64,000 bases of DNA from Gracilinanus agilis (taxonomy: Eukaryota): assembly GCF_016433145.1 (NCBI RefSeq), contig NC_058132.1:646539319-646603318 (forward strand), in the 5' to 3' direction. The translations under genes were made by a program, and so were the position numbers. Positions 3,401-47,047 of this stretch are shown piece after piece. Position 1 is the stretch's first letter; each line of letters opens with the position of its first letter. The notes under the pieces are model-generated. The model was not told where the DNA came from. It made no database searches and saw only the letters and a program-made list of their open reading frames with translations.

Positions 3401-4410
3401 ACTTAGGAACCAAAACACAGAAGTTAAGGGTTAAAAAAACCAATTTAAAAAAAAGGTAAATTCAGAATGGGTGAATGACTTGAATATAAAGAAGGAAACT
3501 GTAAGTAAATTAAGTGAACACATAATAGTATACTTGTCAGATCTCTGGGAAAGGAAAGATTTTAAGACCAAGAAAGAGTTAGAAAAAAATTACAAAATGT
3601 AAAATAAATAATTTTGATCATATTAAATTTAAAAGTTTTTGTACAAACAAAAACAATGCAACCAAAATCAGAAGAGAAACAACAAGCTAGGAAAAAAATC
3701 TTTATAACAAAAAACTCTGAAAGAGGTCTAATTACTCAAATATACAAGGAGCTAAATTAATTGTATAAAAAATCAAGCCATCCCCCAATTGATAAATGGG
3801 CAAGGAACATGAATAGGCAATTTTCAGATAAAGAAATCAAAAGTATCAATAAGCACATGAGAAAGTGTTCTAAATCTTTAATAATTAGAGAAATGCAAAT
3901 CAAAACAACTCTGAAGTATCACTTCACTCCTAGCAGTTTGGCTAAAATGACAGCAGGGGAGAGCAATGATTGCTGGAGGGGATGTGGCAAAATTGGGACA
4001 TTAATGCATTGCTGGTGGAGTTGTGAACTGATCCAACCATCCTGGATGGCAATTTGGAACTATGCTCAAAGGGCTATAAAAAAAATGCCTGCCCTTTGAT
4101 CCAGTCATACCATTGTTGGGTTTGTACCCCAAAGAGATCATAGACAAACAGACTTGTACGAAAATATTTATAGCTGTGTTTTTGTGGTGGCAAAAAATTT
4201 GAAAATGAGGGTATGCCCTTCAATTGGGGAATGGCTGAACAAATTGTATCTGTTAGTGATGGAATACTATTGTGTTACAAGAAATAATGAACTGGAGGAA
4301 TTCCATGTGAACTGGAATGACCTCCAGGAATTTATGAAGAGTGAAAGGAGCAGAACCAGGAAAACTTCATGAACAGAGCTGGATACACTGTGCCACAATC
4401 TAATGCAATG
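422..4410 (+). pseudogene. Disrupted L1 ORF2p (APE endonuclease + reverse transcriptase)
   Basis: Translates as IITLNVNG..CCLQET (from 437), GDLNL, FTKIDH and SDHNAI. RT motifs [23 protein letters not shown] and LFADDM lie in 2063-2800, and CWRGCG lies near 3970. Many stops and frameshifts plus a SINE insertion; the probable start codon reads AGG. Confidence 0.95.
3258..3452 (+). mobile_element. SINE1_Mdo-like tRNA-derived CORE SINE inserted in L1 ORF2
   Basis: GGGGCAGCTGGGTAGCTCAGTGG head, B-box GGTTCAAATCC and A-tail. TSD aagataaattcag (3245-3257) / aaggtaaattcag (3453-3465). Confidence 0.93.
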
Positions 4411-5517: not shown

Positions 5518-6824
5518 TTTTTTTTAAATTTAGAGTATTTTCTATGGTTACATGATTCATGATTCCCCCACACACACCTCTTGACTCCCCCTTCCCAGAG
5601 GTGACAAGCAATTCCACTGGGTCATACATGGATGATTGTTCAAAACCTATTTCTATGTTTTTCATATTGTAGAAGAATGATCTTTTAACATCAAAACCCT
5701 AATCAAATCTCTATCGAACCATGTGAACGATCATGTTTTGCTTCTATATTTCTGTTCCCATGGTTCTTTCTCTGTATGTGGATAGAGTTTTTTTTTTTTT
5801 TTCATAAGTCCCTCAGAGTTGTCCTGGATCATTGCATTGCTGCTAGTAGAAAAGTCCATTACATTCAATTCTGCTAGAACGTATCAGTCTCTATACAATG
5901 TTCTCCTGGTTCTGCTCCTTTCTCTCTACATCCATTCCTGGAGGTCATTCCAGTTCACATGGGATTCCTCCAGTTCATCATTCCTTTCAGCACAATAGTA
6001 TTCCATCACCATCAGATACCACAATTTGTTCAGCCATTCCTCAATCAATTTTTTGCCACCACAAAAAGAGTGGCTATAAATATTTTTGTACAAGTATTTT
6101 TCTTTATTATTTCTTTGGGGTACAAACCCAGCAGTGGTATGACTGGGTCAAAGGGTAGACATTCTTTTAAAGCCCTTTGGGCATAGTTTCGAATTGCCCT
6201 CCAGAATGGTTGAACCAATTCACAACTCCACCAGCAGTGTATTTAATGTCCCAATTTTGCTACATCCCCTCCAGCATTTATCACTTTCCTTTTCTGCCAT
6301 ATTGGCCACTCCAATAGGTATAAGGTGATACCTCAGAGTTGTTTTAATATGCATTCCTCTAATCAGGAGGGATTTAGAACACTTTTTCATGTGCTTATTT
6401 TTTTTTATTTCATTATGTGAAAACTGCCTCTTCATGTCCCTTGACCTTTTGTTGATCAGGGAATGGCTTGGTTTTTTTGTAAATTTGATTTAGTTCCTTA
6501 CATATTTGGGAAATTTAACATTTTTCAGAGAGTGTTGTTATGAAAATGTTCTCCAAGTTTGTTGCTTTCCTTCTAATTTTGGTTGCATTGGTTTTATTTC
6601 TACAAAACCTTTTTAATTTGATGTAATCAAAGTCATTCATTTTACATTTTGTAATGTTCTCTATCTCTTGCTTGGTCTTAAATTCCTTCTTTTCCCACAG
6701 ATCTGACACATATACTATTCTATGTTCACCTAATTTATTTATGATTTCACTCTTTACATTTAAATCATTTACCCATTTTTAATTTATATTGATATAGGGT
6801 GAAAGATGTTGATATTAACCTAAT
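5518..6824 (-). mobile_element. 5'-truncated L1 (ORF2 3' end + 3'UTR)
   Basis: T-tract at left, then L1 3'UTR and ORF2 C-terminus on the minus strand (CWRGCSKIG in ORF 6220-6435). TSD aagtagtatttttct (5503-5517) / aagtagtgtttttct (6825-6839). Confidence 0.93.
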
Positions 6825-9058: not shown

Positions 9059-9482
9059 AAATGTGTCCATCTGTTAAGAAATTATAAATGTTGTGAATAT
9101 AGAAAATCATGGAAAGATCTGTACTAACTGATGAAGAATGGAGGAGAGTCAAGAAATTAGTGCTTGCACTAACTACAAAAAGGTAATATAAAAATCAACT
9201 ACGTATATGTAAATCATAAGTGAATGTTGAAGAATTCCAAAAACAAATCAAAGCTCCAACAAAAAAGGTTTCAGAAGACACCCCAGTCCTTTGTAGACAT
9301 AAGAGGTGCACAAATGTATTTTGCTCATTATTTAAGACCTTTTTTAATGTATTTGTCAGTTTTGCTTAATTTTTCTCTTATGTTCCTTTTCTTTCACCTT
9401 TAAAATTTATTATTTGTTCTGAAAAGGCTTTCTGAGAGAAGAAGAATTAAAGATCCTGGAACAATTATGGTGATTTCCTTTT

Positions 9483-9735
9483 TTTTTTTTTTAACCCTTG
9501 TACTTCGGTGTATTGTCTCATAGGTGGAAGAGTGCTAAGGGTATGTTTTTTTTTTTTTTTTTAACCCTTGTGCTTTGGTGTATTTCTCATAGGTGGAAGA
9601 TTGGTAAGGGTGGGCAATGGGGGTCAAGTGACTTGCCCAGGGTCACACAGCTGGGAAGTGGCTGAGGCTGGATTTGAACCTAGGACCTCCTGTCTCTAGG
9701 CCTGACTCTCACTCCACTGAGCTACCCAGCTGCCC
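9483..9735 (-). mobile_element. Full-length SINE1_Mdo-like SINE plus a second 3' SINE fragment in tandem
   Basis: Full copy at 9546-9735 and tail fragment at about 9483-9542. One TSD, gtgatttcctttt (9470-9482 / 9737-9749). Confidence 0.93.
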
Positions 9736-14170: not shown

Positions 14171-16473
14171 CCTAACAAGTTCTAATGTAGCCCAGACAAG
14201 AGAAGACTTAGAAGGAATGTGATCATTTTTGATCAAGTATTTGAAAATAAATCACAGGAAGAGGAGTTATTAGACTTCTTTTTCTTGGCCAGAGAGATGG
14301 TCTCTGAAGGCCCTTCAAATTGAGATTCTGCCATTCTGATTCTATGATTTACTCTGATTTACAATCCTGGGACTTACAAAATCAAAATACCCTTCCGTGG
14401 CTATCCTTCCCCACAATGTGTCTTTTCCTTGTATTATTGGAATGTCAGCACCTTGAGGGCAGGGACTACCTCACTTGCATAAACAAAATCCTTACACTTA
14501 ATAAAGCACCAGACCCATAATAGGTGCTGAATATTTTTGTAATTCATTTATTTATTCATTTATTCATGCTCATCCTATGACCTGGACTAGGGTGCTTTAT
14601 TCTTCTAGACCTCAGGTTTATTAATAAATGGCAAAAGGACTTCTGCTCATCTCACAGGAGAAAGCATTGGAAAAGCGAAGTTTCCTAGAGAGATGGTGGG
14701 GATCTTAAAGAGGAGCCTTCTATGTGAATCTAGATGAGGAATAGAACTGTTGACCTCCTGATCCTCTGTTAAGTCCGTACTCAAGCTGTTTGCATGTAAT
14801 TCCCTTGAATTTTACATGACCCCCTTCCCCTACGCCAGATACCAAAGCCAATTGAACTTCTGTTGAAAGACTAAAACTATTCATGCAGATGAAGATGATG
14901 ATAAAACCATGAATAGCAGTTGTAGTACAGGTAGCAGTAACTACTCTTACTACTACTACTAGTCACTAGATCTTTGATTCCATTGGTATCAAGAACTCCA
15001 AATTAAAGAATTCCCTCCACTTCTGTGGATTAGCATGTATTGAACAATTTAAGCTCTTGAGACCATAGGAAACAAGCTTGAAAAGCATTTCGAAAACTTC
15101 TGGTCAAAGCTTCACATTTTACAGATGAAGATGTGGTTGTGACGCTTCTGAGCAATCACTAAATTAGCAAGTGGCTGAGGCTGGACATGAGTTCAGGTTT
15201 TCCTGATTCCACAACTTTAGTCATGATGCTCCTCTGCCTACCTTATATTCTTGGAGTGTTTCCTGGGGCAAAGAGATGACCAAAGGCTTTCAGGAAGTCA
15301 TGTCACCAGAATGTGTCAGAGGTGGAACCTGGAGGAAAATTGTGAGAAAATTGTGGAGAGGATTAGGATAGTAAGTGGTCAATAGTGGGAATTGTGTGAA
15401 TCCCACTGACTCCTGACTCCATCTTGTGACTTGACTATGGAGCTCGTTTAATTTCCTTTCTACTCAATTATTGGCCCAGTCCAAATTCTGTCCTGTGAGA
15501 AAAAAAAATCAAGTATGGGAATTGGGAGAAAACCTTATTGCATTGTTTGAACCTAGCCCTACATGGCTGGGCAACTGGACCACCTGAACCTCCTCCTTTT
15601 TAGAGACCCCTAACTAAGCATCTAGATGAGGCTGACCAACAACACAGTCAGATCCAAAGATCTGGCTGTGAGGAGTTTTCTCGAGATTGTGTATCTTAAA
15701 CAATCCATATGTCTTATCTGCAAACATAAATAAAACTTATCTGAAAACAATCAATCGTCCTTGTCCTGTTATTTTGATTATTTGCAGACACTTGAGGAGG
15801 AGTGGGACACTTCCTTTTCTGAATTCAGGGAATTGTACCTGAAAATCTCTCTCCAAACTTGGGAAGAACTTACTCTTTCATCGAATTACAAATCTGATTG
15901 CCTAGTATTGTACTGCCTTATTTGATTGATTCATTTTTACTGTATAATAGTCTATCTCTCCCTATATTCAAAGTTCAGCCCTAAACTGAGGAAGGAGAAT
16001 GGTCCCGGTTTATTAAGCAATAGGCATGCCCTGCTCAATAAATTGATATTCTCGGAAGATCACAATTTGTTTCCTTAGTCTTTCCATCTTTTCCTCATTA
16101 CAGAACTTGAACCCAAGCATCCTTGACTCCTACCAATGCCACAGCACACTCCTTTAATCAAGTGATATTTTCATCACTCCACAAGTAATCTTTTCTCTGA
16201 ACCATTCCTACTGACTTCTGGAGATGATTGATGATCAATGAAATGTCTACCAGCTCTTTGAATATGTGACTTCAAATTCATTTCCTAAAGAAAGTCTAGC
16301 CAGATTGGGCCACTTTTCCACCATGCATTCCTCCTTCTGTGGCTTCATGACACTCATCTTTTGTGTTCTGATCTGCACTTTTGATGTTTGGATTGTCAAT
16401 GCCTTCTTAGATTTGTTTGGGAGCTCTCCAGAGGTGGAATGCATTTTTTAATACATTGGTTCCATCTCTCCAG

Positions 16474-16492: not shown

Positions 16493-18530
16493 GTTAAGGC
16501 CAATACTCTATCCACTGTTTAAGATATCATTCAATGAGTATTTATTGAGGAACCCCAAGGCACAAGGAAAAATCTCCACACACTTTTGTTTTCATGTCAC
16601 ATTTAACCAAAGCCTATATGGCATAAGTAAAAGAATCTTATATATGGGACCATGAATCAATAAATATTTAAGCATTTTTTCTTTTTTATTTTCAAAGAGC
16701 TCTCTAATTGTGATTTTTTGTTTTTTAATAATTAAGATATCTTATTTTCCCAATGACACGTAATAACAAATATCTACAAAAGTTTTCCAAACTTAAATGA
16801 TTCAATTTGTCTCTTTCCTTCCCTTCCCTCCCCTGTCCCAGAGCTGGCAAGCAATTTGATTTGAGTTCTCTATGTAAAACATGAAAAATATATTTCCATA
16901 TTTTGTCATTTTTGTAAGAGAATAATCATATATAACCAAAACCCCAAAACAAAACCCAAATAAGCTAAAATGAACAATCACATGCTTTGATCTGCATTCC
17001 CATTCCAGTACTTCTTTCTCTGGATGTTAATAATATTCTTTGTTATAAGTTCTTCAGAATTGTTCTGGATTATTTTATTGCTGATAATAGTTAAGTCTAT
17101 CACAATTAATCATTCCATAATATTGCTGTTACTGTGTACAAGGTTCTCCTGGTACTGCTTATTTCACGCTGTATCATTTCATATAGGTCTTTCCAGTTCT
17201 TTCTGAAATCATCCTGTTCATTTCTTACAGCACAAAAGTATTCCATCACCATCATATACCACAATTTATTCAGCCATTCCCCAATTGATAGACATCCTTT
17301 CAATTTCCAATTCTTTGCCACCAAATAACAGACCAAGCTATGTATATTGTTGTACAAGTATGTCCTCTCCCCACCCTTTTTTTATTCCTTTGGGATATAG
17401 AACTAGTAGTGATATTAGTGAATCAAAGGGTGTGTGCAGTGTGTTATAGCTCTTTGGGCAGAGTTCTAAGTTGCTCTCTAGAATGATCAAACAAGTTCAC
17501 AACTCCATCAATGCAGTAGAGTTCCAATTTTGCCACATCCCCTCCAACATTTATCACTTTCCTTTGCTGTTATTATATTGGCTAATCTTACAGGTATGAG
17601 ATGGTACCTAAAGATAGTTTTAATTTGAATTTCTACAATCAAGAGTGATTTAGAACATTTTTATATGATTATTGACAACTTTGATTTCTTCATCTGAAAA
17701 CTATTTATCACATCCTTTGGCCATTTGTCAATTAGGGAATGATTTGTAGAAAAATTTCCCAGTGTATTGTTTCCCTTCTACACATGGTTACATTGACTTT
17801 GTTTGTATAATTTTTTTTAACTTAATAGAGTCAAATTAGTTATTTTATATCTTGTTCTGTTCTCAAGCCATTGTTTGGTCATAAATTCTTCCCTTCTCCA
17901 AGATCTAACAAATAAACTATTCTATGTTCCTCTAATTTACTTAAAGTATTACCCTTTATGTCTAAATTAGATACCCATTTTGTTCTTATCTTGGTAGAGG
18001 GTGGGAGACATTAGTCTATACTTAATTTTTGCCATACAGTTTTCCAGTTTTCCCAGCAGTTTTTTGTCAAAAAATGCATTCTTATCCCCAAAGCTGGATT
18101 GTTAAAGTCATTTATCCCTCTCTTCCATTAATCCACTATTCTATTTCTTAGCCAGCACCAGACTATTTTAAAGATTATTGATTTACAGTATAGTTTAAGA
18201 TTTGGTACTGCTAGGCTACCATCCTTCATGGTTTTTTCATTAATTGCCTTGATATTATTGATCTTTTTTGAAAGTGAATTTTGTTATTATTTTTCTAGTT
18301 GTATAAAATAGTTTTTGGTAGATTAATTTGCATGGCACTGAATAAGTAAATTAATTTAGTTAGAATTGTCATTTTTATTATATGAGTTTGACCTACCCAT
18401 GAGCAATTAATGTTTTTCCAATTGTTTAGACCTGTCTTTATTTGTGTGAAAAGTGTTTTGTAACTGTGATCATATAATTCCTGTGTTTGGTTTGGCAAAT
18501 AAATTCCCAAGTATTTTATATTGTCTAGAG

Positions 18531-22619: not shown

Positions 22620-24790
22620 TGGCATCTTTTTTTTTTATTCTGTCCTTCTCTATTCCATTTTGTTTTATATTTACAGTTCCAAATGTTTAACCCTCTTTCC
22701 ATGCCTTCCCAAACTAATTAAGAAATACAATATTCATTAAATACAAACAGCTTCATTATACATAGAAAGTCATGGAAAACATTTCTGCATTGACCATGTT
22801 CTGTAAAGAAAGAGAAAAATACTTTATTTGTTACTTAGAGTTCTTAAGTTCTCTAAATGGAGGAGGATAGAGTTTTTTATCTTGAGGTTTTGGAAATTGT
22901 GGTAGATCACTGTATTCATCAGAGTTCTTGGGTATTTCATAGTTATCTTTACAATATTAATGTTACCATGTGCAATGTTATCTTAGTTCTGTTTACTTCA
23001 TTCTGGAACAATTCGTATACATCCTTCCAAACTTTTCAGAAACCATCTCCTTCATTATTTCTTACATATACCATAACTAGTTTACTCAATTAATAGGCAT
23101 CCTCTTAATTTCCAAATCTTGCCACCACAAAAAATAATTACTATAAATATTTTTTGTACACATAGGTCCCTTTTATTCTTTTTCCTTGACCTCTGATTGG
23201 TATTGATATTGCTGGGTCAAAGGTTATGCACAGTTTTATAAACCTTTGGTCAGAATTCCAAATTTTTCTTTAGAATGGTAAGATGAGTTCACAGCTCCAC
23301 TGACAGTCCATTACTGTATTTATTTTCCCATATGACTTTGAACATTTATCATTTACATTCCTTTCATCTTAGTCCATCTAATGGGTGTTAGTTAAGTGAT
23401 GTTTAGATGTGTATTTTTCTAGTTACTTGTGATTTGGAGAATTTTTTCATTTGACTATTGATACTCTCTATTTTTCCCTTGGAAAACTGCTTCTTCTTTT
23501 CTTTCAACCATTTATCAATTGGTTCTTATTCTTATAAACTAGGTTTGATTGCCTATATTTCTTCTTTCTTTTTTTAATTAATTAAGAAAAATTTTACATG
23601 GTAACATGGTTCATGTTTTTCCCTCCCCTCCTTTCAGCTCCCTCCCATAGCCAACATGCAATTCCTTTGGGTTTTACATGTGTCATCAATTGAGACCTAT
23701 TTCCACATTATTGATATTTTCACTAGGATGATCGCTTAGAGCAGGGGTCGGCAACGTATGGCTCTCGAGCCATATCTGGCTGTACCTCCCGACCGGTCAG
23801 TCTGAGTTATTAATTTATTATCAAGTAAAACATAATCCCCATATTGGTCATTGTTGTAAGAGAATACTCATATAAAACCAAAATTCAAAATGAAAACACA
23901 AATAAACTAATGTGAAAAAACAGTATGCTTTTATCTGCATTCCTACTCCAACAAGTTCTTTTTATGGAGGTAGATAGTATTCTTTGTCATAATTCCTTTA
24001 GAATTGTCCTGGATAGCTGTGAGCAGCTAAGTTTCTGACAGTTGATCAGTCCACAATATTGCTGTTACTGTGTATGATGTTCTGTCTCTGCTTATTTCAC
24101 TCTGCATCAGTTCATATAGATCTTTCCAGTTTTTTTTGAATTCATACTGTTCATCATTTCTTGTAACACAATAGTATTTCATCACCATCATATACCATAA
24201 TTTTTTCAGTCATTCCCCAATTGATGAACATCCCTTCAATTTCCAATTCTTTGTTGCCACAAAAATAATTGCTATTAATATATTTGCACTAGTACTTTGA
24301 GATTTGGCACTTCTATGTCCCCTTCTTTCCTTTTCCCCATTGATTCCCTTGATAGCCTTGAACTTTTGTTCCTCCTGTTGCATTTAATTTTTTATTATTC
24401 TAGTTCTATTATTAGCATTATTATTTCCTACTACTTGGCATTTTGATTAATATGACATTCTATAAGTAAATTAAATGAGGGAGAAGAGACATTTTTTATT
24501 ATATTGCTTCAGATGACCCATGATAATTGTTGTTTCTCCAATTATTTAAATGTCTTTATTTATGTAGAGATTCTTATAATTGTGTTCATATAGTTCCTGG
24601 GTTTGTCTTGGCAGGTAGACTCCCAGGTACTTTATATTGTCTAAAGTTATTTTAAATTGAATTTCCCTTTCTATTTCTTACTGCTGAAAATTGCTGGTAA
24701 CATATAGTAATGCTGATAATTTATGTAGGTTTATTCTACATCCTGCAATTTTGCTAAAGTTGCTAATTATTTCAACTAGATTTTAGTTGG
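22620..24790 (-). mobile_element. Composite of several L1 3' fragments of different ages
   Basis: At least three 3'UTR/ORF2 C-terminal pieces (about 22620-23560, 23565-23741, 23830-24290) and an RT piece (about 24560-24790). Confidence 0.8.
23742..23781 (+). mobile_element. Left end only of a hAT-Charlie element
   Basis: CAGGGGTCGGCAACGTATGGCTCTCGAGCCATATCTGGCT after gcttagag. No right TIR or second TSD found. Confidence 0.7.
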
Positions 24791-25052: not shown

Positions 25053-25238
25053 GGGGGCAGCTGGGTAGCTCAGTGGAGTGAGAGTCAGGCCTAGAGACAG
25101 GAGGTCCTAGGTTCAAACCCGGCCTCAGCCACTTCCCAGCTGTGTGACCCTGGGCAAGTCACTTGACCCCCATTGCCCACCCTTACCACTCTTCCACCTA
25201 TGAGACAATACACCGAAGTACAAGGGTTTAAAAAAAAT
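25053..25238 (+). mobile_element. SINE1_Mdo-like SINE, full length, young
   Basis: Intact head and B-box. TSD aataaattcc on both sides. Confidence 0.93.
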
Positions 25239-26299: not shown

Positions 26300-26729
26300 A
26301 TAGAACTAAAAACTTCTTTAGAGTGGGAGACATATTAATATATAAAATCAATACAATGAGCATTAATTGTTTTCCATTCAGCCCCTTATTATTTTTCCCT
26401 CATTTACCATTTAATAGTGTTTTGCAAGCCTAAAGTCACTATAGAAATGGTAGTTATAATTATAGGAGATAGTATTCATGCTGTGGCTTGAAAGGTACCC
26501 TCTACCATGTTATAGGCACATAGGCACTAGAACTAGGCTGTAAATGTCACCTAGAGACTGAATTATTGCCCTAATATTCAGTGCCATCTGGTCATCCACA
26601 AGTGGTTGAGAAGAAGGTTTTTCAAAGTGGTTCAAGGATGTGACATACCTGAGTCATGGGAAGTACCCAATAAATGTTTGTTGAATGACTGCCTGAAGGA
26701 GCTAAAGAAGGCACCCTATTAAGAGAAAG

Positions 26730-26915
26730 TCTGGCACAGTGGAAAGAAAATGATTCAGAAACCCAGGTTTCCAATCCTACCCTAGAGAGTAGCCATTTGG
26801 ACATAGTAGAGTTAGCTCCGCAGGGCTTCCATTTCTTTATCTCTAAAATGGGGAGACCAACGCCTCTAGTATGTGTCACACACAATTGTTATGAAGATCA
26901 AATTAACTAATATAT
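26730..26915 (+). mobile_element. MIR (donor of the 93-bp inverted copy)
   Basis: 'ggcacagtggaaag...acccaggtttccaatcc...tttctttatctctaaaatgggg...ttgttatgaagatcaaatta' follows MIR from head to tail. Confidence 0.75.
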
Positions 26916-27659
26916 ATTATACATATATATATATATACATATATAATACAAATCATCAGCCCTCAACTGTTCAAGAAATGACAAATATTATTGCCTTCCT
27001 TTAGGGGGTGGAAAAGTACATGTGAAGGTGTGTGAGTGTGCCCATGTACGTACGTGCACACATTTTTTTCCTAGCCAGTTTCGGTGTGAGCCCATCTTAA
27101 TTATCAGCTCCCATGAAGCCTGGATCCCTTGATGCTCCTTCACTGTGCCAGAGGTCCTTGTTCTATCTGAGGGAATGTTAACTCTACCAGGTAGATTATA
27201 TAGGCTAATTAGTAGAACTTGAACTCTGGAACCCTTCATTATGTTATAATTCCACACCACCCATCTGAAGGGGGAAAAAAGGCTCCTTCATTCATTAATT
27301 GCCTGCAGTGAAACTTCCTTGCCTTTGAACACACAGAAAGTCACAGTATTGTTAGAGGGAGAGAGGAGGAAAAGATGAGTCACTGGAGTATTTTTCTAGA
27401 GTGGTAATAGTTTGGGAGAGGCAGGGGTTGGACTCTGTCTTCAAATAGTTAATGTGTATGTCTGTGTTTATGGGTTTTTTTCTATCTGTGGTATGTGTGT
27501 GTATATGTGTGTATATATACATACACATATATATGTATTCACACACACATATACATATGTACCACTGAAGGACTATAGATTTAGCTAGAATCCAATCTTA
27601 TTTCATCCATGGAGAAACTGAGTCTGAAAAGCAATAACATTACATAGGATCGCCTAGAG

Positions 27660-27850
27660 CAGTGGTTCCCAAACTTTTTTGGCCTCCCACCCCCTTTCCA
27701 GAAAAAAATATTACTTAGCCCCTGGAAATTATTTTTTTTTAATTTTAATAGCAATTAATAGGAAAGGTAAATGCACTTGTGGCCATCACCACTCCCTGGA
27801 TCGCTGCAGCACCCACCAGGGGGCGGTGGCGCCCACTTTGGGAATCACTG
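27660..27850 (+). mobile_element. hAT-Charlie MITE (191 bp) carrying a CTCF motif
   Basis: TIRs CAGTGGTTCCCAAA / TTTGGGAATCACTG. Degenerate TSD gcctagag / gcccagat. CCACCAGGGGGCGG at 27813-27826. Confidence 0.9.
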
Positions 27851-28099
27851 GCCCAGATGCTAAGAGGCAGAATAGATAGAAAAGAAAGCTTCTTTGACTT
27901 CGGTGTGGGTGTTTGTTAGACAGAAACGCAGAGACAGAGAACTCTGGATGGTGTGATGTAGTAATAAAATCCATGACCTCAAATGTAAATACCCAAATGC
28001 ACAAACCATGACCATCAATTAAGAAGAACAGCACTTGTCTGGTGGCAAATTGGTCCTTGGAGAAGCCAGACTCAAAGGTAACATTGAGCCTGGGGGGAG

Positions 28100-28460
28100 G
28101 CAAACCATTACTGAAATGTGACTCTGGGGAGCTCGAGCCTACTCAGAAGCGGGGATGAAGGATAAGAGCATGAATAAGCAATTCTCATAGGGGGAAATCC
28201 AGCAGTAAGAGAGAAAAAGCATAATCGTGAACACTTCAAGGGGAGATCAATGGAGAGAGAAATGGGTGTTTTTGGTTGGTTTTTTTTTTGTCGTTTTATT
28301 TTTTTGTCAAAGTGTACTACAAACCACCTGAACAAAAACTGGGAACCATGGAGGAGTTTGGGAAATGTTGACAAGCATGGGACCTAAAGGCATGCTATCA
28401 CAGTGATGGGGTACTTCAATTATCCAGACATCTGCTGAAGCTCTCTCTCTGCCAAAAATC
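28100..28460 (+). mobile_element. CR1/L3 ORF2 endonuclease remnant
   Basis: Translates VYYKPP...EEFGK (from about 28313) and VMG(Y)FNYPDIC* (from 28403), matching CR1 GVYYRPP and GDFNYPDICW motifs. Confidence 0.8.
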
Positions 28461-29244
28461 CATGACTCACCTGCTCTCTGTGCCTAAAAGTAAGGGAGTG
28501 TGTTCTAATTTGTTTTTTGATTGTTTGGGGGGGCAGCATATTTTACCCCAAAACATTTGCAATATTGCATTGGCAAATATCTGTTTCTAAGAGATCATCA
28601 ACTGTGTAGCTAATTGATAATCATTTGAGAGCAAGCCAGATGAGGGTTCATGTGTGATAGACTTAGAGAAAAACGAAAACTTAGCCCTCCAGGGTTTTCC
28701 CTAGATTCCTGAGCATAAGAGTCATCAATCCTCTTGACACCCACCCTGTAAGTCACAGATGCGAATTAAGAAGCGGAGAGATGGAGTATTATAATTTGAC
28801 AAATAATTCATATATATATATACATATATTGCAAAAGATGAAGACATATGGAGGAGCAGATAATATAATTAGATTAATTGAGAACTGTTTGAATGACTAG
28901 ATTTAGAGCATGTCTGGTTCACTGTCACTTTGTCAAAAAATCTCCAGGGAGCAATATAAGATATAAAACAGATCGTTTCAATTCTATTAAATTAAAAAGG
29001 GTTTGTACAAACTAAACCAATGCAACCAAGATCAGAAGGAAAACAGAAAGCTGGGGTGGAGGTGTTTCATACCCAAATATTTCCAATAAAGGTCTCATTT
29101 CTCAAATATATAGAGAAATGAGTCAAATTTATGGAAAAAAGTCATCCTATTGGTAAAGGCTCAAAAACATATGAACAGGCAGTTTTCAGATGAAGGAATA
29201 AAAACTATCTGTAGTCATGAAAAAAATGCTCTCGACAACTCTTG

Positions 29245-29443
29245 TTTTTTTTTAACCCTCACCTTCCATCTTGGAGTCAATCCTGTGTATTGGTTCCAAG
29301 GCAGAAGAGTGGTCAGGGTAGGCTATGGGGGTCAAGTGACTTGCCCAGGGTCGCTCCGCTGGGAAGTGTCTGAGGCCAGATTTGAACCCAGGACCTCCTG
29401 TCTCTAGGCCTGGCTCTCACTCCACTGAGCTACCCAGCTGCCC
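29245..29443 (-). mobile_element. SINE1_Mdo-like SINE (long-tail variant)
   Basis: T-tail at 29245 and head end 'cagctgccc' at 29443. TSD ctctcgacaactcttg (29229-29244) / ctctcaataactcttg (29549-29564). Confidence 0.92.
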
Positions 29444-29448
29444 TCGTT

Positions 29449-29541
29449 CCCCATTTTAGAGATAAAGAAATGGAAGCCCTGCGGAGCTAACTCTACTATG
29501 TCCAAATGGCTACTCTCTAGGGTAGGATTGGAAACCTGGGT
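29449..29541 (-). repeat. Perfect 93-bp inverted duplicate of 26761-26853
   Basis: Base-by-base reverse-complement identity, 93/93. Confidence 0.95.
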
Positions 29542-30959
29542 CTGCCTCCTCTCAATAACTCTTGATTAGAGAAATGCAAATTAAAACAACTCTGAGGTAC
29601 CACCTCCCACCTACTGGATTGGTTTACATGACAGAAAAGGAACATGATAAGTGTTGGAAGGAATGTGGGAAAAAATAGACACTAATGGATTGATGGTTGA
29701 GCTGTGAGGTGGTTCGACCATTCTGGAGAGCAGTTTGTAACTATGCCCAAAAGGCATTAAAACTCTGCTTGCCCTTTCATCCAGCAGTACCACTACTAGG
29801 GCTCTATTCCAAAGAGATTTTTTTTTTAAGGAAAAGGATCTATTGGCATGAAAATTATTTGTAGCAGCCCTTTTTTGTGGTAGGAAAGGAGACTGAGGGA
29901 ACTTCCCTCTATTGGAGAATGGCTGAGTAAGTCGTGATATAGTATTGTAATGGAATATTATTGAATTATAAGAAATAATGGGCAGAATCGCTTCAGAAAA
30001 ATCTGGGAGGACGTATTAACTGATGAAATGAAGTGAGCAGAACCAGAAGAATATTGTACACAGAAACAGCAACATTGTATAATGAGCAACTTTGAAGGAT
30101 CTAGCCATTCTCAGCAATAGAGTGATCGGAGGCAATCGCAGATAAAAAAGGTGATCTAACTGCAGACAAAGAACTGATGTCATCTGAATGCAGACCAAAA
30201 CATACTCGATTTCCCTTCCTTTTCTCTTCTTTTTTGCTCAAGATCTCTCTCACTAATAGGACAAACAAATCGTTTTATGTGACTACGTATAAAATCTCTG
30301 TAAGATCCTTTGTGGTCTCAGGGAGGGAGAAAGCCAGGAAAGTCAGGGAGGGAAATATTTAAATTCAAAAATTTTGTAAAGTGGGTAACTTGCTTTCACA
30401 TGCCTTTGGGAATAATAGAAGAGAACGACGTCTCCAAGGATCTCCGTTTGGCCTCCGAGCTGACCTCGGCTTTGCAATGTCTTTGATGCACAATTTCCAG
30501 GTTCACAGGAGACACCAAATGAAAGGGCTAACGGCTAAGAGGGATGACGGACTGAAGATCCAAAGAGCAGCCTAAGAGCATTGGTCTGGCGCTGAGGACG
30601 TGCCATTCAATAGGGCTAAATCTAAAGCTCCATGGTTGAAAAAGAGAAAATATCACTCCAGCATATTGACTTTTTTCACTTGATTTTTCCTCATTTTGTG
30701 TTTCTTGCAACATGGCAAAGATGGAAAAACCTTTCATTTCACTTCACATGTGAAACTGATGACAATCGCTTGTCTTCTCGATGGAAATCAATTTTAAAAA
30801 TGTTCGAAACAAAGAAAATAAAAATTAAATCGGCTTCACAATTACAAAAGAGAGAGCGTAATAGTATAATATAATATAATAGCATAATAGGCTAACTGGA
30901 CAGCGTTCCAGGGATGCCTGGCTGCTTGGAGGTGAACCTTCTCAGGAGGAGATGTCCTT

Positions 30960-31660
30960 AGTCCTGGGGCCCCTGTCCTGGCCAGATGCCGTCTAGGGCA
31001 CTGTATTCAAATCTTGTCACTGCCATTTTGGAAGGACATTGAACGTGGGAGAAGATCCAAGGGAGGAAAAGGAGGAGAATAGAGGATCCTGAGTTCGAGC
31101 AAGATGAGTACCAAATAAAGGGTGTGAGGCTGCAGAAGAGAAGATTGACGGCGAATGTATCTGTATGTAAGCATCCGAGAGACTGGCATGGAGACCTTTT
31201 GTGCGGGACCCCAGAAGTCATAAGCACGAGTGATGGGTGAAAAATTCAAGGGAGGGACAGAAAGGCTGGCAAAGCTCCTACTGTGTGTCAGGGACTGAGC
31301 TAAGCAGTTGGTGTTTTTTTTTTTTTTACAAATATTCTTTGTCCTTCGATCTTCAAAACAATCCTGGGAGGTAAATCCTGTCGGCCCCATTTTACAGTTG
31401 GGCAAACTGAGGTAGCAGACATTAAGGGAGCTGCACAGGATCCCACGACTAGTAAGCATCGGAGGCTGAATTTCATCTCAGGTATTCTGGACTGCAGGAC
31501 CAGAGCTCTAACCGCTGGGCCACCAGCCACTTCTCTAGACCAAAAGTCTCTGCCTACAAAAGGTTTCTAAAACCTGAAGCTGTTTCCCAGTGGAATGGGC
31601 TGCCCGGAGCGAGGGCTCTTCAAGCAGAAGCAGGACATCCACTGGTGGGATCGGTTAGAA
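30960..31660 (+). mobile_element. CR1/L3 3' fragments with an inserted MIR (about 31250-31540, minus strand)
   Basis: 'tattcaaatcttgtcactgccattttggaaggacattgaac' and 'ggaatgggctgccc...ctcttcaagcagaagcaggacatccact'. Confidence 0.6.
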
Positions 31661-38937: not shown

Positions 38938-39148
38938 GGGGGCAGCTAAGTAGCTCAGTGAATTGAGAACCAGGCCTTAGAGACGAGAGGTCCTAGGTTC
39001 AAATCTAGCCTCAGACACTTCCCAGCTGTGTGACCCTGGGCAAGTCACTTGACCCCCATTGCCTACCCTCACCACTCTTCTGCCTTGGAGCCAATACACA
39101 GTATTGACTCCAAGCCGGAAGGTGAGGGTTTAAAAAAAAAGGAAGAAA
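38938..39148 (+). mobile_element. SINE1_Mdo-like SINE (long-tail variant)
   Basis: TSD gaaaggtggatgctt (38923-38937) / gaaagatggatgctt (39149-39163). Confidence 0.92.
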
Positions 39149-44239: not shown

Positions 44240-45500
44240 GGGATTGCTACGGATCAGGACCTAGGAGCTGGAGGCCTGGTTTCAAATCCTGATCCTGCTG
44301 TTAAGTAGCTGAGTGACCCTAGCCGAGCCATTGAGCTGAGACTAAGGATTCTGGCTTAAATCGTCTCTAAGCCCCTTCCCGGTGAAACGTTAAATGACTC
44401 GAGGATCCAATGTTCTCTCTACATGCGTGAAAGGCAAATTCACTAAGTAGTAAACACCATTTCTTTTCTGAAAATTATTTCCTGTCTATGAAGCCTGTCT
44501 TTATTATCCTCATCACTGTCAGGCCTAGAGCTGAAGAAGTCTTTGTGGATGATCTTTTTACCACCTAAGGAAGTTAGAGGTCCTAGAAGTTAAATGACTT
44601 GTCTAGAGTCATCCGGCTCATGTGTCGAGGCAGAATGTGTATCTTTTGGATTTAACCCTTGTGCCCAGTTCAAGGGAGAGAGCTAACTTTCTACTAAATG
44701 GGCAGGCATTCGTTCCCTTTGTTTCCCCAGCAGCCAGCATGGTGCTTGGCAGGCATGTCAGAGGCACTTCATGCATTCATCCCGATTGTCCGAGTCCACA
44801 TTCCACCGGCATTTGTGGAGCGTGTCCTCTGGACAAGGTACTGCCCTGGACGCTGCCGGGACCGAGAGGGGAGTGAAGACGGAGAGGGCTTCGTCTCCCA
44901 GACCTCACCACTGAGCAGGGCTCGGCAGACGCCTATTTCCTTTGCTGGTTTGGTTTGAAGAGGGCGTAGGAAGTCCACCAGCGAGTGAGTGGGGTTCGCT
45001 GGAGAAAAGCAGTCCTTGGGAGATGGGGGAAATGGGGCCAGTTTCCTGTAGGAGGGGGCCCTGGGCGCGAATCGGAGAGGCCGGCTAGCGTTCCCCCATG
45101 GGGGTAGGAGATGAGGACAAGAACATTCGGTGATAGAAGGAAGCCAAGGTCACATCCAGACACCACGAGGCAGCCAATTTGGCTGGCGTGTCGGGAACAT
45201 GAAGAGCTGTTGGGTGAGACAATGCTGGAAAAGTACAGATTTGAACCAGATAATGAGGAGTCGGGAAACCCCAACAGAGAGTTCCAGCATCTTTATTCAA
45301 TATGGCCAAAGGAGCCCCGAATGGAGCCAGTATGGAGACTTCTTGGCCTGTAGAGTGTAGAAGGGACGGCAGGGTGGGGAGTCCAGAGGCCCAGAGGCCG
45401 AGGGGGAAGGTGGCTCCGGAATTCAGAGAGAGGTAAAAGGGCTGCAGCTGGGACGGTGGAGAGGGGGACACTGGGGTGGAGGCAGAAGCAGAGTGCAGGC
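44240..45500. mobile_element. GC-shifted MIR and L2 remnants
   Basis: MIR at about 44240-44400 and 44500-44690. L2-like 'cattccaccggcatttgtggagcgtgtcctctggacaaggtactgccctggacgctgccggg' (about 44800) and 45150-45500. Confidence 0.55.
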
Positions 45501-45849
45501 GCTGGTGAAGGACAGGCACGAAGGCATCACCGAGAATGCCAAAGAGTCCCAGACAAGGGCAGCCACCTCTAGCAGTGGCCCGGAGGTTCAGGGCCTGCAT
45601 CCTGTCCCTTTAAGTGGTCGAGTCCAATTCTAGCTCCTAATGTTGGCTCCGGGAAACAGAGCCTGGAAGCCGTTCACAGACAGAGCCTTGTTTTCCACAC
45701 ACGGCTTCATCCGCCTCCTTTAAAAAAATTAAAAATAAAAAAATGGGGGTTGACTTTGGAATTTGTTGATTTATAGTATTTTCTTTTTCTCTTTTTTTTT
45801 TCCTTAAAAAAACATTTCAACATATTTGAAGTACAAAACAGTTTTAGAG

Positions 45850-46850
45850 GAGTGGGGGCGGGCCGGGCGTCTCTGGGCCCAGCAGGGCCCCTCTCTGCCC
45901 ACAGGGGGCAGGCCATGCCATGGGATGGCCCTCGGGCTGGCCAGTGCTCCCGGGAGGCTGCCAGGGCCACTTAGCCAAGAGCCCGTGGGGGGAGGGGGCC
46001 TGGGTAGCCTTGGCCATGCTCCTCGCCCCCTCCCAGGCCTCCCTCCTCGGCGTCCCCCTCCCCGGCGGCATCTGCCATTTGGGCCGTCCCCAGCTCACTC
46101 GCCTGACGCTGTACCGTGACCTACTTAGGGCCAGCCAGGCCGGCTGCTCCCAGAGCCGGCTGAAGTCAGAAAGGGCCCTTCGGGAAGGGTGAGGCCGGCC
46201 CAAACCCCCCAAGAGGAGAGGCAAGGAGGGGGAGAGGGCAGGACCAGGGGCCGGGGAGCCTGCCAGCAAGCTCGGGGCGCCCCCAGCCTCTTAGGCTCCG
46301 AGTCCGCGGGAGCCAGGCTCGGCTTCGCCCTCACTGCCGGGGGAGCTGGCAGCTTCGCCGGCCTCGTCTCAGGCCTCGGGCCTCGCAGGCCCCATTCGCA
46401 CGGCAGAGGAAGCCCCCAAACTGAGTCTTGGATGGAGAAGAGACACATGTGGCTCCCCCCAGCTGTTCCTGCAGAGACCGCCGAGAGCTACCCTCCGGCA
46501 GCGGGGGTCAGAGCAAGTCTGAGGGCCGCGGGCCGAGCAGGGGGAGACGCTGTGGCCGAGGAGGCGGAGCGCGGCAGCCAGAAGCAGCCGCGGCAGCAAC
46601 GCGCACTTCCTGGAGGGCCTGAAGGCTCTCGAAGCTCGGCAGCCTGGTGAGCTCCGCACGTCGTGCCCGTCTCATGCCAGGCACGGCCCTGCTCACAGAG
46701 CTTCCAAATGTGGGAGGGTGCAGAGGAGGCCGGGAGCCCGGGAGGCCCGCGTCCGAGTCCGGAATGTTCCGCGCTCCGTCCTGCTGACTCTCCATCGAAG
46801 CCACGCGGCAACCTCACAGAGCTGGGTTCCTCCAAGAAGACCTGGATTCA
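45850..46850. promoter_or_regulatory. Orphan CpG island
   Basis: About 1 kb, very GC-rich with dense CpG and not recognisably repeat-derived. No gene could be assigned. Confidence 0.55.
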
Positions 46851-47047
46851 AATCTCACTGCGGAGACTTACTGGGCGTGTCTCCCTGCACCAGTCACGTA
46901 GGCTCTCTCGGCCTCAGTTTCCTCGTCTATAAAATGGTGAAAGTGACCCGCAGAATTAAGGCCCCGGGGGCCCTGATAGAGCTGGACGCTTCTTGCTTCT
47001 GGCCCTAATTAGCTTCTACAAAAGCACCAAGTGCAGGTAGGAAGAGG

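What the first reader, a model, noticed from the sequence alone, without database searches (positions are those of the whole stretch)
26761..29564. Perfect 93-bp inverted copy of an ancient MIR captured inside the TSD of a SINE 2.6 kb away
Seen: 29449-29541 is the exact reverse complement (93/93) of 26761-26853. The donor lies in the middle of a continuous, highly diverged MIR, so such identity cannot be ancestral repeat similarity. The copy sits directly at the 5' end of a minus-strand SINE1 (29245-29443). SINE, 5-nt linker (tcgtt), copy and 7-nt filler (ctgcctc) all lie between one TSD pair in the host L1 (29229-29244 / 29549-29564). The linker cgtt also matches the donor flank after skipping 5 nt. 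Known: L1-mediated insertions can carry locally templated DNA at the 5' junction through RT template switching or repair synthesis. Inference: the SINE insertion captured nearby genomic DNA in inverted orientation. Puzzle: the TSD copies differ at 2/16 and the SINE body is mutated (gggtcgctccgctggg at about 29348-29363 versus gggtcacacagctggg in sibling copies), yet the 93-mer is perfect. That points to later capture or ongoing gene conversion between the arms. The pair could form a 93-bp stem around a 2.6-kb loop containing the CTCF-bearing MITE, giving a potential inversion substrate, or a dsRNA/ADAR substrate if transcribed.
Basis: partly seen in the sequence, partly recalled or inferred. 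Interest (0 to 1): 0.8.

Follow-up and report, generated by a model that had tools for sequence, protein, structure and literature searches.

The report
Inverted local DNA copy at SINE junction
A 94-base stretch of an old MIR-like repeat has been copied, flawlessly and upside down, into the exact seam between a SINE and its target-site duplication 2.6 kb away; it most likely records a messy but known kind of L1-driven insertion, though when it happened could not be settled.

Summary
Window 26761-26854 and 29448-29541 are a 94/94 perfect inverted repeat (not 93), and the linker is 4 nt. The copy lies between the 5' end of a full-length minus-strand SINE1 and the right target-site duplication (TSD), inside an L1 that is otherwise continuous. 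The source is internal to a MIR-like element that runs on past the arm, so copying went from 26.8 kb to 29.5 kb. Seven other SINE1 copies in the window have their TSD 0-7 nt from the 5' end.

Best reading (about 0.5): capture during the SINE's L1-mediated insertion. The cDNA 3' end folded back onto resected single-stranded DNA of the same broken end, copied 94 nt, and was joined to the other end. Strand, side and orientation all fit. This matches recently described remodelling of ORF2p-induced break ends.

Timing is unresolved. The TSD differs at 2/16 against 0/94 in the arms (p=0.02). All seven locus-specific changes hit A:T pairs and are partly clustered, unlike sibling copies, so they may not measure age.

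A later templated insertion, gene conversion and an assembly artefact remain open. Read-level validation failed: the read-laying run was lost.

The parts
26730..26918 (+). MIR-like (tRNA-head/CORE-type) old repeat that contains the source; its ends are approximate
   Evidence: It aligns colinearly with two other MIR-like copies found through the motif ATCTGTAAAATGGGGA (4 hits, 0.05 expected). The arm against 15035-15275rc gives z=6.6. The 3' flank 26868-26918 against 31308-31548rc gives z=5.1, with 0/500 shuffles reaching it. The 5' flank match alone is not significant.
26761..26854 (+). Source arm of the 94-nt inverted repeat
   Evidence: 94/94 complementary to 29448-29541. It lies inside the MIR-like element.
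26855..29228 (.). Spacer between the source and the insertion site (about 2.4 kb). Under the fold-back model it must have been single-stranded.
   Evidence: Coordinates. It holds one exact CTCF-core match at 27813-27826. That it was single-stranded is inference only.
28955..29228 (+). Host L1 (ORF2 3' region), left of the insertion
   Evidence: The joined flanks align across the junction with L1 copies at 3591-4289, 6109-6622, 17388-17702 and 23200-23504.
29229..29244 (+). Left TSD (ctctcgacaactcttg). It carries both TSD differences, at 29234 A>G and 29236 T>C.
   Evidence: The L1 consensus from four window copies matches the right TSD at both positions. TSD pair found.
29245..29253 (-). Poly(A) tail of the SINE (9 T on the + strand)
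29254..29443 (-). SINE1 body, full length to within 1 nt, of the long 3'-block subfamily
   Evidence: 88-91% identical to six siblings; the closest is 38940-39139. It has 5 private changes in 173 comparable sites.
29353..29357 (+). Cluster of three private substitutions in the SINE
   Evidence: The resulting GCTCCGC (29353-29359) equals 26815-26821 and the reverse complement of 29481-29487.
29444..29447 (.). 4-nt linker (tcgt) between the SINE 5' end and the copy
   Evidence: 'cgt' plus the first arm base matches source flank aacg (26859-26862) after a 5-nt skip.
29448..29541 (-). Inverted copy of the 94-nt source
29542..29548 (.). 7-nt filler (ctgcctc). 'ctg' matches the source flank after a 2-nt skip. 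The final 'ctc' repeats the start of the TSD.
   Evidence: The alternative parse, a 19-nt TSD with a 4-nt slip, is inference from the sequence.
29549..29564 (+). Right TSD (ctctcaataactcttg), the ancestral version
29565..29980 (+). Host L1, right of the insertion

Best explanation
The 94-nt copy was made during the L1-mediated (target-primed) insertion of the SINE1.

Shown from the sequence:
- The + strand was nicked after 29244.
- Its 3' end primed cDNA synthesis on the SINE RNA. That cDNA is the + strand text 29245->29443.

Inferred:
1. After the second strand was cut, the 5' end of the minus strand on that same (left, 'primary RT') DNA end was resected by at least 2.5 kb. This left the + strand single-stranded back to the MIR-like element.
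2. The cDNA 3' end, carrying a few extra bases (tcgt), folded back and annealed by microhomology near 26859-26862.
3. It was extended on + strand 26854->26761. This writes exactly the observed reverse-complement copy.
4. The nascent end then came off and was joined to the other (reciprocal) end through a short filler. That gave one TSD pair around poly(A), SINE, linker, copy and filler.

The polymerase is unknown: ORF2p copying DNA, or a host repair polymerase. A switch onto a + sense local RNA would give the same product. I rate it lower because it needs an internal fragment of an RNA as acceptor.

The perfect identity is most simply explained if the event is young. In that case the SINE and left-TSD changes were inherited from the source copy or made during the event. 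An older capture later homogenised by gene conversion is the fallback.
For: - The copy sits within 0-1 nt of the SINE 5' end and directly before the right TSD, with only 4 + 7 extra nt. Seven other SINE1 copies in the window have TSDs 0-7 nt from their 5' end. The seam is exactly where a cDNA 3' end would be.
- The host L1 is otherwise uninterrupted.
- The source lies on the poly(A) side and is inverted. Fold-back of the primary RT end predicts both (geometry worked out).
- The 2.4 kb distance is within the under-10-kb resection range invoked for L1-associated deletions. Inverted duplications and inversions made by self-annealing of resected ORF2p-induced break ends have been observed in L1-expressing clones and cancers, including one case on the primary RT end.
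- 5' extra nucleotides occur at 12.4% of full-length Alu insertions.
- Both ends of the copy show a 3-nt templated match after a short skip (joint chance about 0.01), as expected of unstable priming.
- All 7 locus-specific changes are at A:T pairs, against 7/19 in siblings (p=0.006). Five of the 7 lie in two tight clusters. They therefore need not measure elapsed time.
- The SINE cluster creates a 7-mer identical to part of the arm (p about 0.03). This hints that the SINE and the arm interacted during switch-prone synthesis.
Against: - If the SINE is as old as its divergence and TSD suggest, a co-inserted 94-nt pair should differ. TSD 2/16 against arm 0/94 gives Fisher p=0.02. At the sibling TSD divergence of 3/58, P(0/94)=0.007. 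At 3-4% per lineage, P=0.004-0.0005.
- The poly(A) tail is only 9 nt, and the nearest sibling is only 90% identical. Neither looks young.
- The nick site CTCTTG/ATTAGAG is not a canonical TTTT/AA site.
- Described inverted duplications at L1 insertions were adjacent to the break, with small hairpins. This one is 2.4 kb away with the intervening DNA kept.
- Many first-reader notes in this genome report locally templated inverted insertions away from SINE junctions (unchecked). If they hold, a retrotransposition-independent process exists here.
- No read-level confirmation was obtained.
Confidence: 0.5

Rival explanations
1. Later, retrotransposition-independent templated insertion. Long after the SINE inserted, a break or stalled fork at the SINE/TSD seam was repaired by microhomology-mediated template switching (MMBIR/FoSTeS or polymerase-theta-type synthesis). 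The repair copied 94 nt from 2.6 kb away in inverted orientation.
For: - It explains the perfect identity beside an apparently aged SINE and TSD without further assumptions.
- Both junctions carry short fillers and skip-and-match microhomology.
- First-reader notes in the same genome list many 100-370-bp locally templated, often inverted, near-perfect insertions in other contexts (unchecked leads).
- The only strongly matching run (X12) holds 9/16 sampled words of 29405-29600. That is the share expected if the junction words are absent (0.52-0.57). A SNP-block model gives a likelihood ratio of about 3.4 over 'present'.
Against: - The insertion would have to land, without loss of a base, exactly between SINE nucleotide 1-2 and the first TSD base. 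I estimate that coincidence at 0.1-1% per event.
- Nothing about the seam suggests fragility or an L1 endonuclease site.
- The atypical A:T-only spectrum of the SINE and TSD changes removes much of the age argument that motivates this rival.
Confidence: 0.25
2. Old capture at SINE insertion, with the two arms later made identical by gene conversion between the inverted repeats.
For: Arm identity (0/94) is higher than the TSD (2/16, p=0.02) and the sibling TSDs predict. Close inverted repeats are known conversion substrates (general knowledge).
Against: - The 94-bp arms are below the length usually needed for efficient mammalian recombination (general knowledge).
- The weak k-mer hint that another individual may lack the junctions fits a young event better.
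- Nothing in the window tests conversion directly.
Confidence: 0.12
3. Assembly or cloning artefact: the 105-nt insert is not in the animal's genome.
For: - The identity is perfect.
- The window comes from an assembly with sized gaps (N runs of 168 and 461 nt).
- Word share in X12 drops from 0.83 over 3.1 kb to 0.56 at the junction region.
- No read evidence was obtained.
Against: - An artefact would have to insert a short, distant, inverted segment at a single point that coincides with a biological seam. It would also have to add fillers showing microhomology to the source flanks.
- No assembler or cloning error I know of does this.
- X12 may be the assembly's own sample or a different individual, so its word share is ambiguous.
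Confidence: 0.08

Closest known systems
Inverted duplication or inversion of genomic DNA by remodelling of ORF2p-induced double-strand-break ends (bioRxiv 10.1101/2024.12.14.628481, section 9)
   Same: Local genomic DNA appears in inverted orientation between the 5' end of a TPRT insert and the other break end. A TSD-like overlap is kept. The proposed steps are resection, self-annealing by microhomology and priming of DNA synthesis. [quoted passage not shown]
   Different: Those cases are L1 insertions in cultured cells and tumours. The inverted duplications were next to the break (small hairpins) and on the reciprocal end. Large hairpins gave inversions with deletions. Here the event is a germline SINE insertion. 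The template is 2.4 kb away on the primary RT end, nothing is deleted or inverted, and only 94 nt were copied before release.
Chimeric retrocopies made by L1 reverse-transcriptase template switching or RNA ligation (U6/L1, Alu/L1 and similar; bioRxiv 10.1101/2025.02.02.635956, PMC4476161)
   Same: There are two unrelated parts in the same sense orientation. One poly(A) lies at the 3' end and one TSD pair surrounds the whole.
   Different: Known 5' partners are abundant, usually full-length small RNAs, Alu or spliced mRNA pieces from elsewhere in the genome. Here the 5' part is an internal 94-nt piece of a non-genic old repeat only 2.6 kb away, which points to a DNA template.
5' extranucleotides ('filler') at Alu/L1 5' junctions (PMC2912911)
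   Same: Extra bases lie between a full-length SINE 5' end and the TSD. This is seen at 12.4% of full-length Alu insertions.
   Different: Those fillers are typically a few bases. Here the filler is 105 nt, of which 94 are templated from a nearby locus.
Replication template-switch mutations and MMBIR templated insertions (PMC5453318, PMC7954356)
   Same: A reverse-complement copy of nearby sequence is inserted, creating a perfect inverted repeat with microhomology at the switches.
   Different: Short template switches span tens of bases within a few hundred bp, and they have no link to a retroposon seam or a TSD.
Twin priming (5'-inverted L1 insertions)
   Same: An inverted segment lies at the 5' side of a TPRT insert, within one TSD.
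   Different: In twin priming the inverted part comes from the same retroelement RNA. Here it is genomic MIR-like DNA. 5' inversion is almost absent from Alu insertions (1 of 5554).

Membership tests
L1-mediated (TPRT) SINE insertion | 3' poly(A) tail directly followed by a target-site duplication | tested here: met
   A 9-nt A tail (29245-29253) abuts the left TSD. The 16-nt TSD pair matches at 14/16.
L1-mediated (TPRT) SINE insertion | The host sequence is continuous once the insert and one TSD are removed | tested here: met
   The joined flanks align through the junction with four other L1 copies.
L1-mediated (TPRT) SINE insertion | First-strand nick at a TTTT/AA-like endonuclease site | tested here: inconclusive
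   The nick is at CTCTTG/ATTAGAG: pyrimidine-rich before a purine, but not canonical. Siblings show TCTT/G-type to TTTTTT/A-type sites.
Inverted duplication by remodelling of ORF2p-induced break ends | An inverted copy of local genomic DNA between the insert's 5' end and the reciprocal end | tested here: met
Inverted duplication by remodelling of ORF2p-induced break ends | The template lies on one of the two break ends, on the strand predicted by self-annealing of a 3' overhang | tested here: met
   The source is on the + strand on the poly(A) (primary RT) side. The + strand 3' end carrying the cDNA would copy it as observed (geometry).
Inverted duplication by remodelling of ORF2p-induced break ends | Microhomology at the inversion junction | tested here: inconclusive
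   Strictly there is only 1 nt. A 3-4-nt match (cgtt/aacg) appears after a 5-nt skip. A single-end match of this kind has a chance of about 0.1.
Inverted duplication by remodelling of ORF2p-induced break ends | The duplicated segment is adjacent to the break (small hairpin) | tested here: not met
   The source is 2.4 kb from the target site, and the intervening DNA is retained.
Chimeric retrocopy by RT template switch between RNAs | Both parts in the same sense, one poly(A), one TSD pair | tested here: met
   On the minus strand the MIR-sense copy precedes the SINE in sense orientation.
Chimeric retrocopy by RT template switch between RNAs | The 5' part is a copy of a cellular RNA, with its 3' end as acceptor | not testable with these tools
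   No expression data were obtained. The segment is internal to an old repeat, with no RNA end at 26854.
Twin priming | The inverted part derives from the same retroelement RNA | tested here: not met
   The inverted part equals 26761-26854. It shows no significant similarity to SINE1.
Palindrome arms kept identical by gene conversion | Arm identity exceeds that of sequence duplicated at the same time | tested here: inconclusive
   0/94 against 2/16 gives p=0.02. The TSD changes may not be clock-like, and simultaneity is unproven.
Palindrome arms kept identical by gene conversion | Substitutions shared by both arms relative to an outgroup | not testable with these tools
   No orthologous sequence could be fetched.

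The most novel reading that the evidence does not exclude
This locus may be a germline fossil of L1-ORF2p break-end remodelling. A SINE insertion intermediate was resected for more than 2.4 kb, primed DNA synthesis on itself, and left both a perfect long-range inverted repeat and a burst of A:T-targeted, partly templated substitutions in the new SINE and TSD. It may also be one visible case of a genome-wide class of local inverted templated insertions in this L1-rich marsupial genome that is driven by L1 activity rather than by replication errors.
Probability: 0.2. Interest if true: 0.6.

Novelty: new member of a known kind. Interest (0 to 1): 0.35.

Why it matters
If the capture was part of the SINE insertion, the locus carries experimentally described L1 break-end remodelling into the germline and to a trans-mobilised SINE. 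So far that remodelling has been seen in engineered cells and tumours. It would also show that kilobase-scale resection and fold-back priming can happen without deleting or inverting the intervening DNA.

It is also a caution for dating. The changes in the SINE and TSD have a spectrum unlike that of neighbouring copies, so divergence from consensus may overstate age at complex insertions.

The 94-bp perfect stem around a 2.6-kb loop is a potential substrate for inversion or, if transcribed, for long double-stranded RNA. Nothing here shows that either occurs. On its own this is one locus with unresolved timing, so the interest is moderate.

Tried and rejected
- **Read validation.** No read-level, polymorphism or RNA-editing evidence was obtained.
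- **Run searches.** Only X12 holds the locus well, and runs of other organisms hold 2/16 words in the junction-region search. I guess, but did not test, that these are conserved L1 words.
- **Fetching the locus from other assemblies.** Seven encoding-contig look-ups of window ORFs, including two that span the junctions, found nothing on record.
- **Gene context.** No convincing coding exon was seen in the GC-rich stretches at 31-34 kb and 45-47 kb. The transcript-strand question behind the RNA-template idea stayed open.
- **MIR identity via SINE1.** Testing it through homology to the SINE1 head/CORE gave colinear but non-significant alignments. A 16-nt version found the source, the copy and two further MIR-like elements, which then gave significant alignments.
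- **Rejected: 5' transduction from a SINE source gene.** The source locus would need this very diverged MIR segment upstream of a SINE, and the local MIR is followed by more MIR, not by a SINE.
- **Rejected: twin priming.** The inverted part is not SINE sequence.
- **Rejected: homology-guided pairing of the SINE cDNA with the MIR CORE.** It would place the 3' end at the MIR head, not at 26854.
- **Rejected: young multicopy element.** No other copy exists in the 64 kb. A genome-wide count was not possible.
- **Earlier notes.** None exist for this window.
Full report
**1. What is there**

Window 26761-26854 (+) and 29448-29541 (-) form a 94-nt, 100% complementary inverted repeat with 2593 nt between the arms. 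The extra base shortens the linker to tcgt (29444-29447). No 14-mer of the arm recurs elsewhere in the 64 kb. This is the only perfect repeat of at least 45 nt in the window.

**2. The neighbours**

- 29245-29443 is a minus-strand SINE1. It is 88-91% identical to six other copies and aligns from its first bases to a 9-nt A tail.
- Siblings begin GGGGCAGCTGG, and this copy reads a-GGGCAGCTGG. It is therefore full length to within one base.
- SINE1_Mdo is a CORE-SINE mobilised by L1, and the opossum still has identical, recently inserted copies (PMC4408412).
- The sequence on either side is one L1 fragment. With the insert and one TSD removed, the flanks align straight through the junction with four other L1 copies.
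- The TSD is 29229-29244 / 29549-29564 and matches at 14/16.
- The L1 consensus shows that the right copy is ancestral at both differing sites. Both changes (29234 A>G, 29236 T>C) therefore occurred in the left copy.
- Read on the minus strand, the order is: TSD, gaggcag, MIR-sense 94-mer, acga, SINE, A9, TSD.
- In seven other SINE1 copies the TSD lies 0-7 nt from the SINE 5' end. A 105-nt filler is exceptional here.

**3. Direction of copying**

A 16-nt MIR motif, recalled from memory and used only as a probe, hit the source, the copy and two other sites. That is 4 hits against 0.05 expected. Aligning those two elements with the source region gave two results:
- The arm aligns with 15035-15275rc (z=6.6).
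- The sequence after the arm (26868-26918) aligns colinearly with 31308-31548rc (z=5.1, 0/500 shuffles).

The 94-mer is thus an internal piece of an older MIR-like element that continues beyond it. The 29.5-kb copy is the derived one. Evidence for continuity on the 5' side is only suggestive: a tRNA-like TGGCACAGTGG box, not significant alone.

**4. Mechanism**

The + strand text TTTTTTTTT-AACCC...GCCC is the first-strand cDNA primed from the + strand 3' end at 29244. The left DNA piece is therefore the 'primary RT end'.

The next + strand bases, TCCCCATTTT...CCTGGGT, are what a polymerase would write if that same 3' end used + strand 26854->26761 as template. That template lies 2.4 kb back on the same DNA end. 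It becomes single-stranded if the minus-strand 5' end left by second-strand cleavage is resected.

Fold-back, priming, release after 94 nt and joining to the reciprocal end reproduce the locus exactly. This includes the side of the source and its inverted orientation.

A recent study of L1-expressing clones and tumours describes inversions and inverted duplications at L1 insertions. It attributes them to this kind of resection and self-annealing, on either break end (bioRxiv 10.1101/2024.12.14.628481, section 9). 5' extra nucleotides are common at full-length Alu insertions, at 12.4% (PMC2912911).

Both ends of the copy show a 3-nt templated match after a short skip:
- cgt(t) matches aacg at 26859-26862 after 5 nt.
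- ctg matches cag at 26756-26758 after 2 nt.

The joint chance is about 0.01, which fits unstable priming. The filler ends in ctc, repeating the start of the TSD.

An RNA template (classical chimeric retrocopy) would give the same product. It needs an internal fragment of a local + sense RNA as acceptor, and I could not test transcription.

**5. The age puzzle**

- TSD 2/16 against arms 0/94 gives Fisher p=0.02.
- At the TSD divergence of sibling SINEs (3/58), P(0/94)=0.007.
- At 3-4% per lineage, P is 0.004-0.0005.
- The SINE has 5 private changes in 173 comparable sites, as many as its nearest sibling.

Those changes are odd, however.
- All seven (5 in the SINE, 2 in the TSD) are at A:T pairs, against 7/19 in siblings (p=0.006).
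- Four of the five SINE changes are transversions.
- Three fall within 5 nt and the two TSD changes within 3 nt.
- The three-base cluster turns cacacagc into cgctccgc. This creates GCTCCGC, which is identical to 26815-26821 of the source and complementary to 29481-29487 of the adjacent copy. I estimate a chance of about 0.03 that such a match falls in the arm.

These features suggest error-prone or template-switching synthesis, or inheritance from a mutated source copy, rather than clock-like decay. The SINE may therefore be younger than it looks. That would dissolve most of the conflict. The tests are post hoc and rest on small numbers.

**6. Independent sequence**

Run X12 holds 0.83 of the sampled 31-mers of 26600-29700, but only 9/16 of those in 29405-29600.

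Words wholly inside the arm are supplied by the source locus. If the junction words were missing, the expected share would be 0.52-0.57, against about 0.83 if they were present. A model that loses words in SNP-sized blocks gives a likelihood ratio of about 3.4 for 'junctions absent'.

This is a weak hint of a polymorphic (young) insert or an artefact, and no more than that. Seven attempts to reach other assemblies through exact ORF look-ups failed.

**7. Weighing**

- *Capture at insertion* explains the exact position for free. Its cost is the identity, unless the event is young.
- *A later templated insertion* explains the identity for free. Its cost is the position, which I estimate at 0.1-1% per event. 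Unchecked first-reader notes list many locally templated inverted insertions elsewhere in this genome. That raises the base rate of the second class.
- *An artefact* would have to mimic a biological seam with microhomologous fillers.

I put capture at insertion at about 0.5 if the event is young. A further 0.12 goes to an old capture followed by conversion. A later insertion gets 0.25 and an artefact 0.08.

**8. Comparison and verdict**

This is a templated 5'-junction filler of unusual length and local origin. It is best filed with break-end remodelling at L1-mediated insertions, and it differs in four ways:
- It is in the germline.
- It is at a SINE.
- It is on the primary RT end.
- It is templated from 2.4 kb away without deletion.

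It is not twin priming, since the inverted part is not SINE sequence. It is not a 5' transduction either.

The 94-bp stem would be very stable, about -190 kcal/mol as an RNA duplex. No function is indicated.

Its timing and even its presence in reads remain to be checked, so the interest is moderate.

Noticed in passing
window 29353-29359 vs 26815-26821 and 29481-29487: The three clustered private substitutions in the SINE create GCTCCGC. This is identical to a 7-mer of the source arm and complementary to the adjacent copy about 125 nt away. It looks like a short template switch or quasi-palindrome correction. I estimate a chance of about 0.03 that such a match falls in the arm.
   Followed up: partly
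window 29229-29443: All 7 locus-specific substitutions (5 in the SINE, 2 in the left TSD) are at A:T pairs, against 7/19 in six sibling SINEs (p=0.006). Three of them create new CpGs that are still intact.
   Followed up: partly
window 9585-9735 and 25055-25205: Two SINE1 copies of the short-3'-end subfamily are 98% identical over 151 nt. They are much younger-looking than the focal subfamily. Next to the first, 9466-9514 and 9536-9584 repeat the SINE tail/poly(T) region in tandem.
   Followed up: no
window 27813-27826 (+): This is the single exact match in the window to the CTCF core pattern CCASYAGRKGGCRS (0.04 expected). It lies inside the 2.6-kb loop.
   Followed up: no
window 45000-47000: A GC peak (0.55-0.67), presumably a CpG island, with a second GC-rich stretch at 31-34 kb. 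No convincing coding ORF was seen in either.
   Followed up: partly
window 15035-15275 (-) and 31308-31548 (-): Two further diverged MIR-like elements. They were found by motif and used as comparators.
   Followed up: partly
same genome, other windows (notes s1-153848, s1-192303, s1-173200, s1-196753, s1-173186, s1-153951, s1-189344): First-stage readers flagged many 100-370-bp locally templated, often inverted, near-perfect insertions across this genome. If they are real, they form a recurrent mutation class worth a joint, read-validated survey. That survey should include whether breakpoints sit at L1 endonuclease sites.
   Followed up: no
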